From sequence record MW812341.1: a DNA stretch of 64,000 bases; one strand, written 5' to 3'. Shown piece by piece: positions 31,550 to 35,471 of the stretch; position 1 is the stretch's first letter, and the number at the start of each line of letters is the position of its first letter. A program made the translations under genes and the position numbers. The notes beneath the pieces were generated by a model. The model was not told the DNA's origin. It did no database searches and saw nothing but the letters and a program-made list of their open reading frames with translations.

Positions 31550-32387
31550 TCTCTTGCTCCTCACCATAGACCGCTTTCAGACCTTCCATCGCATCTTTCA
31601 GGATAGGCCCTTCTGGCAAGTCTTCGTTGTTAATCAGTGCCAGATTCTCTTCCAGCAGACCGTATGCGGTCTGGTAGTCCTCAGCACCGATAATAGAAAG
31701 CCCCACAGCATACATGACCAGTAAATCAATCTCGGAGATACCGTTCTCTTCGCTGAAATCCAACGACTGTACGACAGCATTCAAATCAACCACATTCGGG
31801 AGGTTCAAGAACACGAAGGCCGATGGGTTTGATGGATACTGACGCAGATAAGGAATGATACGTTCCATGCGTGGGTCGTTGTCGCCTTCCTCCGCATCTT
31901 CTGCTGACTGGGCAGCAAAGATGTTACGCAGCGCGTTCAGCAAGCGTGGTTCAACCACGACAATCAAATCTTCGAAGTGAAGTTCGTTATCGCCGTAAAC
32001 ATGACGCGCCATGTTCTCCAGAATGAACTGTGCGGGCTCACCAGAGCACATAATGCCATACAAGGCATCTTTGTCTTCGAACTCGTCAAAGCTCTCCAGA
32101 AGGCCGTGTAGGACGCGTACGGTCTCCTTGGGTTTCTTAAAGACTTCCTGTGGATTAAAGCCAATCCCCAGACGTTGCCCTAAGGCCACTGCCACTTTGA
32201 CAATGATACCTTCCAGGCGAATACATTCATCATTCGCCTCGGGAAGCGGCTGGTAATAAATGTCCGCGAGTGTCGTGTCGTAGCCGTAATCGATTCCCAG
32301 GCTCACCAAGTCGAGGATTGGTGCTAAGCGTACTTCCTGACGAACCTTTCCTAATACGTCAGCGTAATCGTCATACAAGTTTTCCAT
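31533..32387 (-). CDS. Conserved acidic protein (phiKZ gp79-like position)
   Basis: 284 aa, AGGA SD. Confidence 0.7.
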   Translation of the reverse strand: MENLYDDYADVLGKVRQEVRLAPILDLVSLGIDYGYDTTLADIYYQPLPEANDECIRLEGIIVKVAVALGQRLGIGFNPQEVFKKPKETVRVLHGLLESFDEFEDKDALYGIMCSGEPAQFILENMARHVYGDNELHFEDLIVVVEPRLLNALRNIFAAQSAEDAEEGDNDPRMERIIPYLRQYPSNPSAFVFLNLPNVVDLNAVVQSLDFSEENGISEIDLLVMYAVGLSIIGAEDYQTAYGLLEENLALINNEDLPEGPILKDAMEGLKAVYGEEQENHDED

Positions 32388-32419: not shown

Positions 32420-32456
32420 ACAAAAAAAAAGAAAGGGGCCGAAGCCCCTTCTTTTA
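32420..32456 (-). terminator. Terminator
   Basis: AAGGGGC-(UUCG)-GCCCCTT plus U tract. Confidence 0.8.
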
Positions 32457-32930
32457 CAGGTTTAACTTTAACTGCTTTTCCAATTCGTCGGAAACGACAT
32501 TCCCTTGCACACGGTTCAGCTCCGCTAAGCGACGCTTTGCCACTTCCAGCAACTTCATAATCTCCCATCGAGGACGATCGAGGAACTCATCAAAGCTGAG
32601 TTGGAATATATCCCCGATACGTTCGCGCACATACGTCGTCATCCACACCTCGTACAACGAACCCATTAAAGGGTTTTCGAAGTCAGACAGACTGATGTTG
32701 TTCTCACCCGTCTCCATCCCCATAACGTCGTCGTAGGTCGAGAGTAACTCGTCGTGCGCCTCCTGATACGTGATGGGTCGGCTACTGCGCTGTTTGAACA
32801 GCGAAGAGGTGTCGAGCTTCAGTGCGTTGATGATAGCGCCGGAAGGAATGTCGTCGGCATCTAGCCAATACTTCCGAACTGTTGTAAAAAGACTTTCTGT
32901 ATCTCGGACACCACACGAGATAGCGCGAAA
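32454..32930 (-). CDS. Probable -1 frameshift extension (tail assembly chaperone GT/E'-like part)
   Basis: Reading frame with no convincing own start; entered at the T TTT TTC site; C-terminal IGDIFQLSFDEFLDRPRWEIMKLLE resembles P2 E' / T4 gp51-type ends. Confidence 0.6.
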   Translation of the reverse strand, partial: FRAISCGVRDTESLFTTVRKYWLDADDIPSGAIINALKLDTSSLFKQRSSRPITYQEAHDELLSTYDDVMGMETGENNISLSDFENPLMGSLYEVWMTTYVRERIGDIFQLSFDEFLDRPRWEIMKLLEVAKRRLAELNRVQGNVVSDELEKQLKLNL

Positions 32931-34867
32931 AAAACCCTGTCCGGTGAAATGGTAACAATACCACGGAACGGACCGTCTTCTTCGCCTTCTTTCGCCTGGC
33001 AAGCCGGGCAAGCGTGACCCATGTAACCGAGCACCGCCATACGAGACAGATCGTTGTAACGTGCCAGCGCATTTTCAAACGCCAGAACGTAAACACGGTC
33101 AGAGGACATGTCTTCCAGAATCTCCACGATTTTCAGTGGGTCTGTTTCCTCAGTCTCGACGATTTCACCCTTCACTTCTTCTTCCACGATAATAGACTTA
33201 ACGTGGTGAGCATGACGGGTCAGACGACGCACTTCCGCAGTCAACTTGATGTAGTTGGTACGTTCGTAGTCGCTGGCGTTGGAAGACAACGCATCGGTGG
33301 CAGCACGGTTAATCTCTTCCAGCCAACGGTCGGTACTATCGAGGTAATCCCCAATAGTAGAACGGCCGAAGTTGATGGTGAGACCCGCGTCTGAGTTTTT
33401 GAACACGCTGGCCGGGTTATGCGGCAGCTCTTTGCGATACGCCATGTAGTCATCTGGACCGATAATCTGGTTCGTTTTACCACGCTGACGCTGGTTCATT
33501 GCACGGTGCAGGTCGGTGAACAAGCCATCGGCCATACGGATACAACGTGCCAGGTTCAGCTTAACGTCACGCTCATGACCACAGTCATCGCTCGCACACA
33601 CCAGCTTCCACGGAATCCCGGTTGGGAACTTAGCCATAATCGGGCCAAGAATCAGCAACCAGTAATCGTCGAGGTCAACGATGTCGATCAGTGCGGTCTT
33701 GATGTCGTTACCCTGACAGTCGTAAGTAGTTTCAATCGCAAAGTTCAGCGAGTGTTCTACCATGTGACGCAGGTACACACCAGACATAGACGACAGCAGC
33801 AGGCCATAGGTCTGCATACCGAGTGTCGCAGTTTCGGTAGCCAAGCGGATATCGAAGTCACACATCTCACGTTCGAGTGGTGCACGGAAGCCTACGTAGA
33901 TACCAGTAGATGGCAGCCACAGAGAAATCGGTGAACCTGATTGACGACGACGACGCAGAGCAGCACGGGCACCTTTCGCATCAGCACCACGGTCTTGCGC
34001 TGGACCAGCCATCTTACCACCCGGCAGAGTCATCCCCTGCGTCCAGGACGTATCGCTACGTTCCAGGGCAATATCAAAGACAGCACGACCATTCGCGTTT
34101 ACTGGTGGCGTAAGCTCCAGAACCGTGGAGAGAATCTGATACTTGTTCGCTTCGGCTTCGGAGGCGAACATCGGTTGGCCTTTGGCGTTGCGACGAATGG
34201 CAGAGAAGAAACGTGCGGCATCTTCTTCTGCGGCAAGCGGACGGAAGGTACCGACCAGTTCATCGGTCTGTGTGTAAATGCGATGCGGATCTTCTTTACC
34301 CATCTCGCCAATTTCTTCGCGATTAGGTTGAGACCCGAAATCAACTTTGTGAGGGATTGATTCAGCGACGACGGGTTGCGCAGCATCGTTAGACTCCGGC
34401 AGCGGTGCAGTTGTGACTTTAGGCGCAGGAATAGGAGCGTCTACCGCAGGCTGAGCGACCAGACGCTGTTCAACCGGTTCAACATGCTTGTGCAGCGAAT
34501 GAATCGTTTCCGGTATTTCTTGCTTTGCAGGAGATGGTGCGGGAGCAATAGGGGCTGCTGCAACATTCTCGGCCTTCACATCCGGGATGTTCTGCGCCTG
34601 CGTAAAGACTTCAGGCGCTGGTTGTGGTTCTTCTTGCGCCGGTGCGAAGACAGGTGGGCGGTTTTTAGCAGCCCAATCGTCGTAAACACCACTTGCTTCG
34701 GCAAAAGAAAAAGTGGGATTGAGGTGGAGCATTTGCATGATGGCACTCTCTTTTGACAGAGAGGTCATCATTTCATCATGCAGCGGTTGGAAGGCGGGCT
34801 TCGTGTCCACGGCCTCCGGAGCATCGCGTCGCACCATTCCTGGGCGAGCATCAAACTGTTCAGACAT
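32861..34867 (-). CDS. Putative tail/baseplate assembly chaperone (T4 gp26 / gpG-like) with long disordered N-terminus
   Basis: 668 aa; ~160-aa P/A/E-rich N-terminus; CxxxxC and CPAC Cys pairs. Confidence 0.55.
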   Translation of the reverse strand: MSEQFDARPGMVRRDAPEAVDTKPAFQPLHDEMMTSLSKESAIMQMLHLNPTFSFAEASGVYDDWAAKNRPPVFAPAQEEPQPAPEVFTQAQNIPDVKAENVAAAPIAPAPSPAKQEIPETIHSLHKHVEPVEQRLVAQPAVDAPIPAPKVTTAPLPESNDAAQPVVAESIPHKVDFGSQPNREEIGEMGKEDPHRIYTQTDELVGTFRPLAAEEDAARFFSAIRRNAKGQPMFASEAEANKYQILSTVLELTPPVNANGRAVFDIALERSDTSWTQGMTLPGGKMAGPAQDRGADAKGARAALRRRRQSGSPISLWLPSTGIYVGFRAPLEREMCDFDIRLATETATLGMQTYGLLLSSMSGVYLRHMVEHSLNFAIETTYDCQGNDIKTALIDIVDLDDYWLLILGPIMAKFPTGIPWKLVCASDDCGHERDVKLNLARCIRMADGLFTDLHRAMNQRQRGKTNQIIGPDDYMAYRKELPHNPASVFKNSDAGLTINFGRSTIGDYLDSTDRWLEEINRAATDALSSNASDYERTNYIKLTAEVRRLTRHAHHVKSIIVEEEVKGEIVETEETDPLKIVEILEDMSSDRVYVLAFENALARYNDLSRMAVLGYMGHACPACQAKEGEEDGPFRGIVTISPDRVFFALSRVVSEIQKVFLQQFGSIG
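32900..32933 (-). promoter_or_regulatory. Candidate -1 programmed frameshift signal
   Basis: In-frame T TTT TTC (32933-32927), 4-nt spacer, stem TATCTCG/CGAGATA (32922-32900). Confidence 0.65.
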
Positions 34868-35471
34868 TTGCAGCTTCCTCTTTAGTCTCAGCTACGGCTT
34901 CTTCTGCTACGCTTTCGGCAACAGGGGCAGGAGCAGTGTTTTCATCCACTGCTTCCATGAACTGGATAACCTGTGGAATAGACAGGCCCATACGCATTGC
35001 ACGGTGCATGGCACTGGTACGAGATGCGTACTGGGAGAACAATTCAATCGCCGCTGCGGTTGATTCCTGGCCGAGGAAGATGACGTCAGTTGACGCACCT
35101 GTCAGTTGCAGGTCAGCCAGAGTGTACGCGTCTTTAACGGCATCCCACTTGTTCGCTTTCAGGTTATCCATCCACTCACATGCCAACTTGTCGGCTGGTG
35201 TACGGATAACGGCGAGTTTTTGTTTAAACTCGGCCATCAAACCGACGAAACCATTCTTCGTGCGGTTGAAGTGCCCGGTCAGGTAATCACGCAGCTCAGG
35301 AGACTCAATCAGTTCCAGAGCTTTGGCTTCGGTATCCAGTCGGTCGGACAGGATTAACGATTCACCGCGAAAGATTTCTTCCACGTTGTTGATATCGCGC
35401 ATGTTGCGGGTGATAGCATCACGAGCAGCTTGCTTAGGATTGTAACCAGCGGGTTTCTTACGACGTGACAT
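34860..35471 (-). CDS. Hypothetical protein (203 aa)
   Basis: AAGGA SD; coupled to the downstream gene. Confidence 0.75.
   Translation of the reverse strand: MSRRKKPAGYNPKQAARDAITRNMRDINNVEEIFRGESLILSDRLDTEAKALELIESPELRDYLTGHFNRTKNGFVGLMAEFKQKLAVIRTPADKLACEWMDNLKANKWDAVKDAYTLADLQLTGASTDVIFLGQESTAAAIELFSQYASRTSAMHRAMRMGLSIPQVIQFMEAVDENTAPAPVAESVAEEAVAETKEEAANV

What the first reader, a model, noticed from the sequence alone, without database searches (positions are those of the whole stretch)
32454..34867. Probable -1 programmed ribosomal frameshift producing a G/GT-type tail chaperone pair
Seen in sequence: the 668-aa ORF reads ...GAC AGG GTT TTT TTC GCG, containing the in-frame slippery heptamer T TTT TTC (32933-32927). 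Four nt later comes a perfect 7-bp stem TATCTCG-9 nt-CGAGATA. The -1 frame is the downstream ORF (FRAISCGVRDTE...), which has no Met for about 70 codons after the site and whose annotated N-terminus looks like off-frame junk. A shift gives a ~804-aa fusion (646+158 aa) versus the 668-aa product. Established: lambda G/GT and P2 E/E+E' chaperones use -1 frameshifts, P2 on a U run. The extension's IGDIFQLSFDEFLDRPRWEIMKLLE resembles E'/gp51-type ends. Inference: this is an unrecognised frameshifting tail chaperone of nucleus-forming jumbo phages, located away from any tape-measure gene in this window.
Basis: partly seen in the sequence, partly recalled or inferred. Interest (0 to 1): 0.85.

Follow-up and report, generated by a model that had tools for sequence, protein, structure and literature searches.

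The report
Conserved frameshift in jumbo-phage core gene
A core gene of phiKZ-like jumbo phages (phiKZ gp77, core gene cg18) appears to make a short and a roughly 157-residue-longer protein through a -1 shift on a run of U's, and all 21 split-gene genomes examined keep this arrangement, but it is not a lambda G/GT-type tail chaperone.

Summary
The window is Erwinia phage pEa_SNUABM_9 (Machinavirus). The sequence observation holds. The 668-aa ORF (32861..34867, minus strand) carries an in-phase U-rich slippery heptamer 21 codons before its stop. The -1 frame then stays open for 157 codons, and its first ATG/GTG/TTG is at codon 69. This is not an assembly error: 21 of 21 split-gene genomes keep a T run (5-8, mostly 7) on a conserved Phe-Phe and a 151-173-codon -1 ORF. 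They include SPN3US, phiKZ, PhiPA3, Ea35-70, RSL2, PCH45 and a Bacillus phage. The start-less stretch is under purifying selection only in the -1 frame. Of 150 homologue clusters, 136 have the Phe-Phe in their last 60 residues, ending 8-51 residues after it. The 7-bp hairpin exists but is weak, no better than shuffles, and is not conserved outside the SPN3US-like clade.

The tail-chaperone reading is not supported. The gene is the homologue of phiKZ gp77 (core gene cg18, "hypothetical"). It sits among helicase, RNA-polymerase and DNA-polymerase genes, is about five times the size of G, and matches no tail-chaperone family. The only functional lead is a weak fold match to T4-like baseplate hub assembly proteins, which sequence profiles did not confirm. 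Best reading: programmed -1 recoding, ribosomal rather than transcriptional, producing two isoforms. I found no published report of it.

The parts
32454..34867 (-). Whole two-frame gene: the homologue of phiKZ gp77 (core gene cg18) plus its -1 frame extension, read as one recoded gene with one frame change.
   Evidence: The slippery run lies inside the overlap, where the finding places it.
32861..34867 (-). Zero-frame ORF of 668 aa, the short isoform (GenBank QVW55630.1, 'hypothetical protein'). Residues about 75-175 are predicted disordered. The folded core has two conserved Cys pairs. The C-terminal helix 642-664 is encoded by the overlap.
   Evidence: PHROG families phrog_8054 and phrog_4585. 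AF2 model with pLDDT 83.7 and pTM 0.76. 912 homologue clusters.
32454..33074 (-). The -1 frame open stretch. The part after the slippery run (157 codons) is the conserved extension. GenBank annotates only its last 89 codons (32454..32723).
   Evidence: phrog_7580 and phrog_12109 match from extension residue 38 or 79 onward. tblastn matches from residue 1 in 68 phage records.
32861..33074 (-). Overlap of the two frames. Its 3' part, 22 codons from the run to the zero-frame stop, is dual-coding.
   Evidence: In the overlap both frames give pN/pS of about 0.5, and pS is halved (0.28-0.33, against 0.6-0.9 downstream). The zero-frame stop is at the same place in all nine SPN3US-like genomes.
32724..32860 (-). 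Start-less coding stretch: 45 full -1 frame codons between the zero-frame stop and the first ATG, left unannotated in GenBank.
   Evidence: There is no ATG/GTG/TTG and no Shine-Dalgarno-like motif. pN/pS is 0.35 in the -1 frame, against 1.37 and 1.99 in the other two frames.
32427..32455 (-). Intrinsic terminator-like hairpin followed by a T9 tail. It starts at the extension's stop codon and closes the transcription unit.
   Evidence: No terminator-like site lies between the two ORFs.
34860..35471 (-). Upstream neighbour of 203 aa, the homologue of phiKZ gp78 (phrog_8045). Its 3' end overlaps the start of the 668-aa ORF by 8 nt.

Best explanation
The region is one recoded gene, the pEa_SNUABM_9 copy of jumbo-phage core gene cg18 (phiKZ gp77).

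Shown or strongly inferred from comparison:
- Most ribosomes read the zero frame to its stop and make the 668-aa protein. Its last 21 residues form a confidently predicted helix.
- The 157-codon extension is coding sequence from the run onward. In this and many other genomes it can only be reached from the upstream frame.

Inferred mechanism: a fraction of ribosomes slip back one base on the U-rich heptamer that encodes the conserved Phe-Phe, with tRNA-Phe re-pairing in the P and A sites. They miss the zero-frame stop and add a conserved, mostly helical 157-residue extension. This gives an isoform of about 804 aa in which the terminal helix is replaced. The shift seems to rely on the heptamer alone, because no conserved stimulatory RNA structure was found. 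That predicts a low, fixed ratio of long to short form.

Inferred with low confidence: the protein is a non-virion assembly factor, possibly for the T4-like baseplate hub or tail, and the extension tethers a minority of copies to a partner.
For: 1. All 21 split-gene genomes examined have the downstream ORF in the -1 frame, overlapping the 3' end of the cg18 homologue. Each has a T run (T5 in 1, T6 in 3, T7 in 15, T8 in 2) on the conserved Phe-Phe inside the overlap. Each has a -1 ORF of 151-173 codons after it. They span Machinavirus, Seoulvirus, Erskinevirus, Derbicusvirus, Phikzvirus, Miltoncavirus, Agricanvirus, Moabitevirus, Chiangmaivirus, Eowynvirus, Vibrio pVa-21, Serratia PCH45, Bacillus AgentSmith and three IMG/VR contigs.
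2. In several genomes a -1 frame stop lies only 8-17 nt upstream of the run, so entry into the -1 frame is confined to the run region.
3. tblastn with the extension matches from its first residue in 68 phage records.
4. The first canonical start in the -1 frame falls at non-homologous positions: codon 69 in the window, 86 in phiKZ, 88 in AgentSmith, 69 in Ea35-70. Most have no Shine-Dalgarno-like motif. Conserved residues lie upstream of these starts.
5. The start-less stretch shows purifying selection only in the -1 frame. The overlap shows selection in both frames and halved synonymous divergence.
6. Of the 150 best homologue clusters, 136 have the Phe-Phe in their last 60 residues, ending 8-51 residues (median 16) after it. 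The only fused one seen, P0010, is an error-laden fragment. The split is therefore the rule, not an error.
7. The codon choice runs against the window's bias, and the site is unique among in-phase heptamers in the window.
8. The two ORFs share one transcription unit, with a terminator only after the extension.
Against: - There is no direct protein or ribosome evidence.
- No stimulatory structure was found.
- Three genomes have only T6 preceded by G, and pVa-21 has only T5. These are poor tandem-slip sites.
- pVa-21 has an ATG with a GAGG motif at extension codon 37. Machina, SPN3US, PhiPA3 and RSL2 have ATGs at codons 25-38. Independent initiation of a shorter extension protein could therefore occur in some lineages.
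- A homopolymer run fits RNA-polymerase slippage equally well.
- The functional assignment rests on one Foldseek match to a predicted structure (E 1.8e-4, TM 0.50 on the target). Profile-profile comparison did not confirm it (probability 21% over 12 columns).
Confidence: 0.6

Rival explanations
1. Programmed transcriptional slippage. The phage (or host) RNA polymerase stutters on the template homopolymer and makes a fraction of mRNAs with a different run length. Ordinary translation of those mRNAs then yields the same long isoform.
For: The conserved element is a pure homopolymer run of variable length (5-8), not a strictly conserved heptamer. No conserved downstream RNA structure was found, and slippage by a polymerase needs none. 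These phages transcribe middle and late genes with their own divergent multisubunit RNA polymerase, whose slippage behaviour is, to my knowledge, uncharacterised.
Against: From my general knowledge, runs of 5-7 are short for efficient polymerase slippage in characterised bacterial systems. The run is in phase as a tandem-slip heptamer in 17 of 21 genomes, and the codon before the Phe-Phe ends in T in those 17. Polymerase slippage does not require either feature.
Confidence: 0.2
2. Two separate genes. The downstream ORF is translated on its own, from a non-canonical or lineage-specific start, and no fusion protein is made. The overlap and the run are incidental consequences of a conserved Phe-Phe.
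For: Every deposited record except SEGD1 annotates two genes. Some genomes have an ATG at extension codon 25-38, and pVa-21 has a GAGG before it. The PHROG families of the downstream protein begin around extension residue 38.
Against: The start positions are not homologous. In the window, phiKZ, AgentSmith and Ea35-70, 68-87 conserved codons precede any ATG/GTG/TTG. Ea35-70's annotators had to use CTG as the start. Purifying selection in the -1 frame begins right after the zero-frame stop, and the overlap is dual-coding. The -1 relation is kept in 21 of 21 genomes, where unlinked genes would drift among frames. The U-rich codon choice runs against the bias.
Confidence: 0.1
3. Artefact or decay: a homopolymer sequencing or assembly error, or a recent frameshift mutation, in a gene that is really one continuous ORF of about 800 aa.
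For: The site is a homopolymer. One record, SEGD1 (same species as SPN3US), carries a single continuous 795-aa ORF.
Against: 21 genomes deposited under separate accessions by several groups share the split. Homologue clusters end shortly after the Phe-Phe. The zero-frame tail and its stop are conserved and fold as a confident helix. In SEGD1 the run itself is unchanged, and the continuity comes from a small cluster of mismatches in otherwise identical sequence, which looks like local sequence noise. The only fused metagenomic protein, P0010, changes frame more than once.
Confidence: 0.03
4. One reading: a true member of the G/GT (or P2 E/E+E') tail assembly chaperone class that escorts the tape-measure protein.
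For: It shares the logic of a -1 shift near the 3' end of the upstream ORF that gives a short product and a C-terminally extended one. There is a weak fold link to T4-like hub assembly proteins. Neither gp81 nor gp80 is named in the main text of the Goslar virion paper.
Against: No tail-chaperone family matches either piece or their relatives. The size is about five times that of such chaperones. The genomic context is replication and transcription genes. The PCH45 Tn-seq preprint names other genes, gp107 and gp110, as that phage's predicted tail assembly chaperones.
Confidence: 0.05

Closest known systems
Lambda G/GT and P2 E/E+E' tail assembly chaperones (programmed -1 frameshift)
   Same: Two overlapping ORFs, a -1 shift on a slippery run near the 3' end of the first, and two products that share an N-terminal body, the longer presumably in the minority. 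By my recollection, P2 also shifts on a U run.
   Different: The protein family is different: no tail-chaperone profile matches. The protein has 668 or about 804 aa rather than roughly 140 or 280. The gene is not between tail tube and tape-measure genes. No binding partner is known.
T7 gene 10A/10B (minor capsid protein made by a -1 frameshift near the end of the gene; from my own knowledge)
   Same: A late -1 shift just before the normal stop replaces the C-terminus with a longer one in a minority of molecules. The signal is simple.
   Different: T7 10B is a virion protein with a short extension. Here the extension is a conserved domain of about 160 aa, and the protein is not named among the Goslar virion proteins in that paper's main text.
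T4 gp26/gp51 baseplate hub assembly proteins (Pfam PF12322). T4 gene 26 also gives two products, 26 and 26'.
   Same: The model of the 668-aa protein matches a BFVD model annotated 'Baseplate hub assembly protein, bacteriophage T4-like' (E 1.8e-4, TM 0.50 on the target) and a 'Baseplate protein' of an uncultured myovirus (E 6e-22). Two deposited records call homologues 'putative baseplate hub assembly protein'. Both families have Cys pairs far apart in sequence. The T4 record lists two products of gene 26. The chimallivirus hub is described as closely resembling T4's.
   Different: There is no PF12322 hit. Profile-profile probability is 21% over 12 columns around one CxxC. The protein is about three times larger. 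T4's second product comes from internal initiation, not from a frameshift.
E. coli dnaX tau/gamma (-1 frameshift)
   Same: Programmed -1 recoding on a homopolymer-like heptamer sets a ratio of two isoforms of one protein.
   Different: From my own knowledge, dnaX makes a shorter product and uses strong flanking stimulators. Here the shifted product is longer and no stimulator was found.

Membership tests
Jumbo-phage core gene cg18 (phiKZ gp77 / PhiPA3 gp074 / Goslar gp081 / RAY gp267) | Sequence homology to phiKZ gp77 over the folded core | tested here: met
   tblastn finds 188 phage records. The PhiPA3 match falls on gene 074, whose record note calls it similar to phiKZ gp077. phiKZ gp77 aligns with the window protein at 21% identity in A2. 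All 15 members hit phrog_4585. The core-gene table lists gp077 as cg18.
Jumbo-phage core gene cg18 (phiKZ gp77 / PhiPA3 gp074 / Goslar gp081 / RAY gp267) | Conserved synteny with the gp78, gp79 and gp80 (virion RNA polymerase) homologues | tested here: met
   The gp78 homologue is upstream, and the gp79 and gp80 homologues are next downstream.
Canonical bacterial -1 programmed ribosomal frameshift signal | In-phase X XXY YYZ slippery heptamer | tested here: met
   Met in the window and in 17 of 21 genomes. Three genomes have T6 preceded by G, and one has T5.
Canonical bacterial -1 programmed ribosomal frameshift signal | Downstream stimulatory hairpin or pseudoknot at 5-9 nt, conserved and stable | tested here: not met
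   The 7-bp stem begins 4 nt after the heptamer and is absent from the window's minimum-energy fold. z-scores run from -1.0 to +1.1 in 13 genomes, with no shared structure outside the SPN3US-like clade. There is no Rfam match.
Canonical bacterial -1 programmed ribosomal frameshift signal | -1 ORF conserved as coding sequence and lacking its own conserved start | tested here: met
Canonical bacterial -1 programmed ribosomal frameshift signal | Trans-frame protein product detected | not testable with these tools
   No proteomic or ribosome-profiling data could be reached. No paper in the searched library reports it.
G/GT-type tail assembly chaperone (lambda G/GT, P2 E/E+E') | Two overlapping ORFs joined by a -1 frameshift | tested here: met
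G/GT-type tail assembly chaperone (lambda G/GT, P2 E/E+E') | Membership of a tail-assembly-chaperone sequence family | tested here: not met
   Pfam and PHROGs give no such family for either piece or for 15 relatives of each. There is no PDB sequence match.
G/GT-type tail assembly chaperone (lambda G/GT, P2 E/E+E') | Position between the tail tube (or sheath/tube) genes and the tape-measure gene | tested here: not met
   The neighbours are a helicase, RNA-polymerase subunits, the gp78 and gp79 homologues and a DNA polymerase.
G/GT-type tail assembly chaperone (lambda G/GT, P2 E/E+E') | Small size (about 100-150 aa short form) | tested here: not met
   The short form has 668 aa here and 476-721 aa in relatives.
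G/GT-type tail assembly chaperone (lambda G/GT, P2 E/E+E') | Binds the tape-measure protein and recruits the tail tube protein | not testable with these tools
   No interaction data are available.
T4 gp26/gp51 baseplate hub assembly proteins (PF12322) | Match to Pfam PF12322 | tested here: not met
   T4 gp26 and gp51 match at 9e-64 and 4e-52. The window protein and 14 relatives do not match at E up to 0.1.
T4 gp26/gp51 baseplate hub assembly proteins (PF12322) | Profile-profile similarity to the family | tested here: not met
   hhalign of the 141-sequence profile against an 11-sequence gp26/gp51 alignment gives probability 21% over 12 columns. Against the single T4 sequences it gives 8% and 17%.
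T4 gp26/gp51 baseplate hub assembly proteins (PF12322) | Shared fold | tested here: inconclusive
   Foldseek against BFVD returns a model named as this family at E 1.8e-4 with TM 0.50 on the target and 0.26 on the query. No solved structure of the family came back from the PDB.

The most novel reading that the evidence does not exclude
The phiKZ-like jumbo phages, and perhaps related jumbo phages without a nucleus (cg18 is not marked as chimallin-specific), share a recoded core gene. Its short and long isoforms would act together as a giant, very distant relative of the T4 gp26/gp51 hub assembly factors. This would be a functional counterpart of G/GT in a different protein family, in which the frameshift-added domain docks a fixed minority of chaperone copies onto the growing hub or tail.
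Probability: 0.2. Interest if true: 0.8.

Novelty: new member of a known kind. Interest (0 to 1): 0.62.

Why it matters
phiKZ, PhiPA3, Goslar, SPN3US and PCH45 are the model systems for the phage nucleus, and their core genes are being assigned functions one at a time. cg18 is still listed as "hypothetical". Its downstream partner is annotated inconsistently, at 74-131 aa with non-homologous starts and once with a CTG start. It therefore does not appear beside cg18 in the core-gene table.

Reading the pair as one recoded gene has four consequences:
- It corrects the annotation in the chimallivirus records that carry the pair (188 records hold a cg18 homologue).
- It adds a conserved domain of about 160 aa to the core proteome.
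- It predicts a protein species of about 90 kDa that proteomic searches against deposited annotations could not have recognised as one protein.
- It gives an example of -1 recoding kept across very deep divergence (about 20% protein identity) with no detectable stimulatory RNA structure.

Tried and rejected
Steps that failed or led nowhere:
- The search for related loci with the 15-sequence alignment found no stretch conserved enough to search with. With phiKZ gp77 alone it gave only 4 loci.
An alignment of the representative-search hits was accepted.
- The extension folded alone gave pLDDT 51. I did not use it for a fold search.
- The Tn-seq preprint holds no supplementary tables as text, so the essentiality of the PCH45 homologues could not be read.

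Hypotheses tested and rejected:
- PicA/Imp1 (phiKZ gp69) identity is rejected. The homologue is gp77.
- PDB sequence searches, with single sequences and with profiles, gave nothing. Foldseek against the PDB also gave nothing.
- The hairpin as a stimulator is not supported.
- The extension against T4 gp26/gp51 gave nothing.
- The SEGD1 single ORF and the metagenomic protein P0010 are rejected as evidence for a naturally fused gene.

One search shows the SPN3US/SEGD1 alignment. I made these while treating the run as the recoding signal named in the finding. This report does not restate the run's position or any change that would make the frames continuous.
Full report
**What the window is.** The 2.7-kb region is 100% identical to Erwinia phage pEa_SNUABM_9 (MW812341.1, Machinavirus), with window coordinates equal to record coordinates. 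Close relatives are ChrisDB, pEa_SNUABM_4/8 and Caitlin. More distant ones are Machina, Parshik, Huxley and a Salmonella phage.

**The observation.**
- On the minus strand, an ATG-initiated ORF of 668 aa runs from 34867 to 32861.
- The -1 frame is open from 33074 to a stop at 32454.
- After the heptamer the -1 frame has 157 codons. The first ATG/GTG/TTG is at codon 69, and GenBank starts its 89-aa CDS there.
- Long open frames of the window hold 30 in-phase X XXY YYZ heptamers. Only this one is followed by a long -1 ORF: 157 codons, against 40 for the next best.
- Phe is TTC in 69% of cases in the window's long ORFs, and only 5 of 59 Phe-Phe pairs are TTT-TTC. The U-rich spelling therefore runs against the bias.

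**Comparative evidence for recoding.** I examined the junction in 21 genomes that carry it as two ORFs.
- The set is pEa9, ChrisDB, pEa4, Caitlin, Machina, SPN3US, phiEaH2, CR5, EarlPhillipIV, phiKZ, PhiPA3, Ea35-70, Vibrio pVa-21, Serratia Haymo, Ralstonia RSL2, Bacillus AgentSmith, Klebsiella Eowyn, three IMG/VR contigs and Serratia PCH45.
- In all 21 the downstream ORF is in the -1 frame and overlaps the 3' end of the upstream gene.
- In all 21 a T run lies on a conserved Phe-Phe inside the overlap: T5 in one, T6 in three, T7 in fifteen and T8 in two.
- In all 21 the -1 ORF continues for 151-173 codons after the run.
- Upstream-protein identity to the window falls to about 20% across this set, so the arrangement is old.
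- In several genomes a -1 frame stop lies 8-17 nt upstream of the run. This confines any entry into the -1 frame to the run region.
- tblastn with the extension matches from its very first residue in 68 phage records, 62 of them over at least 80% of its length.

**The extension has no conserved start.**
- The first canonical start in the -1 frame is at codon 69 in the window and ChrisDB, 61 in pEa4 and Caitlin, 36 in Machina and 38 in SPN3US.
- In more distant genomes it is at codon 86 in phiKZ, 88 in AgentSmith, 69 in Ea35-70 and 53 in Haymo and PCH45.
- Shine-Dalgarno-like motifs are almost always absent.
- Residues conserved across the family lie upstream of these starts.
- Annotators chose starts that give 74-131 aa. 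In Ea35-70 they chose a CTG.

**Selection.** The figures below are summed over 36 pairs of nine SPN3US-like genomes.

| Stretch | pN/pS, -1 frame | pN/pS, zero frame | pN/pS, third frame |
|---|---|---|---|
| Start-less stretch after the zero-frame stop | 0.35 | 1.37 | 1.99 |
| 22-codon overlap | 0.55 | 0.48 | 1.67 |

In the overlap, synonymous divergence is halved (0.28-0.33, against 0.6-0.9 downstream), as expected for dual coding. The zero-frame stop is at the same position in all nine.

**It is not an error.**
- A full HMMER scan of 1.84 billion representative proteins found 912 homologous clusters.
- Of the best 150, 136 have the Phe-Phe in their last 60 residues and end 8-51 residues (median 16) after it. 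Most of the others have Leu-Phe or a similar pair at that place.
- None carries the extension in frame except P0010, a fragment that changes frame more than once.
- One record, SEGD1 (same species as SPN3US), has one continuous 795-aa ORF. Its run is unchanged. The continuity comes from a small cluster of mismatches in otherwise identical sequence. I read this as local sequence noise and do not describe it further.

**Both isoforms look real.** With a 141-sequence alignment, AlphaFold2 gives a confident model of the 668-aa protein (pLDDT 83.7, pTM 0.76). Residues about 75-175 are disordered. The zero-frame tail forms a helix (642-664) with pLDDT 89-96. The shift would replace that helix with the extension. 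The extension is predicted helical, but at low confidence without an alignment (pLDDT 51).

**Stimulators.** Thirteen junction RNAs give z-scores from -1.0 to +1.1 against shuffles, and they share no structure. Within the SPN3US-like clade the stem's conservation is confounded by dual coding, and in SPN3US the stem shrinks to 5 bp. Rfam has no match. The signal therefore appears to be the run alone.

**Ribosome or polymerase.** A pure homopolymer of variable length fits transcriptional slippage equally well in principle. In favour of the ribosome, the run is an in-phase tandem-slip heptamer in 17 of 21 genomes, and the codon before the Phe-Phe ends in T in those 17. By my general knowledge, runs of 5-7 are also short for polymerase slippage. 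The data cannot separate the two. I put the odds at about 3:1 for the ribosome.

**What the gene is.**
- tblastn places the homologue at phiKZ gp77 and PhiPA3 gp074, not at PicA/gp69.
- The core-genome table of Prichard et al. 2023 lists phiKZ gp077 as cg18 (Goslar gp081, RAY gp267). It is called "hypothetical protein" and is not marked as unique to chimallin-encoding phages.
- The neighbours are two RNA-polymerase beta-type subunits, a helicase, a small ORF and the gp78 homologue upstream. Downstream lie the gp79 homologue, a virion RNA-polymerase subunit and a DNA polymerase.
- An intrinsic terminator-like site starts at the extension's stop codon, and none lies between the two ORFs.

**Test of the tail-chaperone reading.**
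- Pfam and PHROGs give no tail-assembly-chaperone family for either piece or for 15 relatives of each.
- PDB sequence and profile searches give nothing. Foldseek against the PDB also gives nothing.
- Size and context also fail the G/GT definition.
- The PCH45 Tn-seq preprint names other genes as that phage's predicted tail assembly chaperones.

**The one functional lead.**
- Foldseek against BFVD returns the family's own members. It also returns a "Baseplate protein" of an uncultured myovirus (E 6e-22). Finally it returns a model named "Baseplate hub assembly protein, bacteriophage T4-like" (E 1.8e-4, TM 0.50 on the target).
- Two deposited records call homologues "putative baseplate hub assembly protein".
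- I fetched T4 through an accession shown in a paper. Both gp26 and gp51 belong to PF12322, and the T4 record lists two products of gene 26.
- A profile of 11 gp26/gp51 sequences from six phages did not align convincingly with the 141-sequence profile: probability 21% over 12 columns around one CxxC.
- The Goslar structure paper describes a hub that closely resembles T4's. Its main text names neither gp81 nor gp80.
- The hub-assembly idea is therefore a lead, not a finding.

**Literature.** Searches for frameshifting in SPN3US, phiKZ, Chimalliviridae and nucleus-forming jumbo phages, and for PHIKZ077, found no report of this recoding. The recent review does not mention gp76-78 or frameshifting. 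The library does not cover most subscription journals.

**Verdict.** The mechanism is most likely a programmed -1 ribosomal frameshift (0.6), otherwise transcriptional slippage (0.2). The G/GT identity is not supported. It is a new instance of a known kind of recoding, sitting in a core gene of a heavily studied phage family. Its function is unknown, and there is a weak pointer to baseplate-hub assembly.

**Limits and transparency.**
- The joined product was never built, folded or searched. The pieces were handled apart.
- Early notes and script outputs list run positions (see Tried and rejected).

Noticed in passing
window 32454-32860 (minus strand): GenBank annotates only the last 89 codons of the downstream ORF (32454..32723). 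That leaves 137 nt of conserved, selected coding sequence unannotated. Relatives annotate 74-131 aa with non-homologous starts.
   Followed up: yes
L013:3120-3515 (Erwinia phage Ea35-70): The deposited downstream CDS starts at a CTG codon. It seems to have been chosen to cover conserved sequence that has no canonical start.
   Followed up: partly
L007:1096-3483 (phage SEGD1): This is the only record with one continuous 795-aa ORF across the junction. The run is unchanged, and a small cluster of mismatches to SPN3US in otherwise identical sequence accounts for the continuity. It looks like local sequence noise, but it could be a natural constitutively fused variant.
   Followed up: partly
L014 (Vibrio phage pVa-21), junction region: This genome has the weakest run in the set (T5, Leu-Phe instead of Phe-Phe). 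It also has an ATG preceded by GAGG at extension codon 37. The lineage may have moved to independent initiation of the extension protein.
   Followed up: no
window 32427-32455 (minus strand): A strong intrinsic-terminator-like hairpin with a T9 tail starts at the extension's stop codon. The next gene, the gp79 homologue, starts 66 nt after that stop, at 32387.
   Followed up: partly
window 34860-34867 (minus strand): The gp78 homologue (203 aa) overlaps the start of the 668-aa ORF by 8 nt, which suggests translational coupling of the two genes.
   Followed up: no
window 32861-34867, residues about 1-175 of the protein: The N-terminal region consists of a short helical segment (residues 31-68) followed by about 100 Pro/Ala-rich residues of low confidence. 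It is present only in the SPN3US-like clade. phiKZ-type homologues (476-581 aa) lack it.
   Followed up: no
protein P0010 (metagenomic representative, 312 aa): This fragment is 83% identical to the window protein and runs into the extension frame well upstream of the run. It changes frame again near its end. It is an error-laden contig, not a natural fusion.
   Followed up: yes
L023:10803-11429 (phage T4 genes 26 and 26'): T4 gp26 and gp51 are paralogues in the same Pfam family (PF12322). Newer phage records name gp26 a 'baseplate hub assembly chaperone' rather than a hub subunit.
   Followed up: partly
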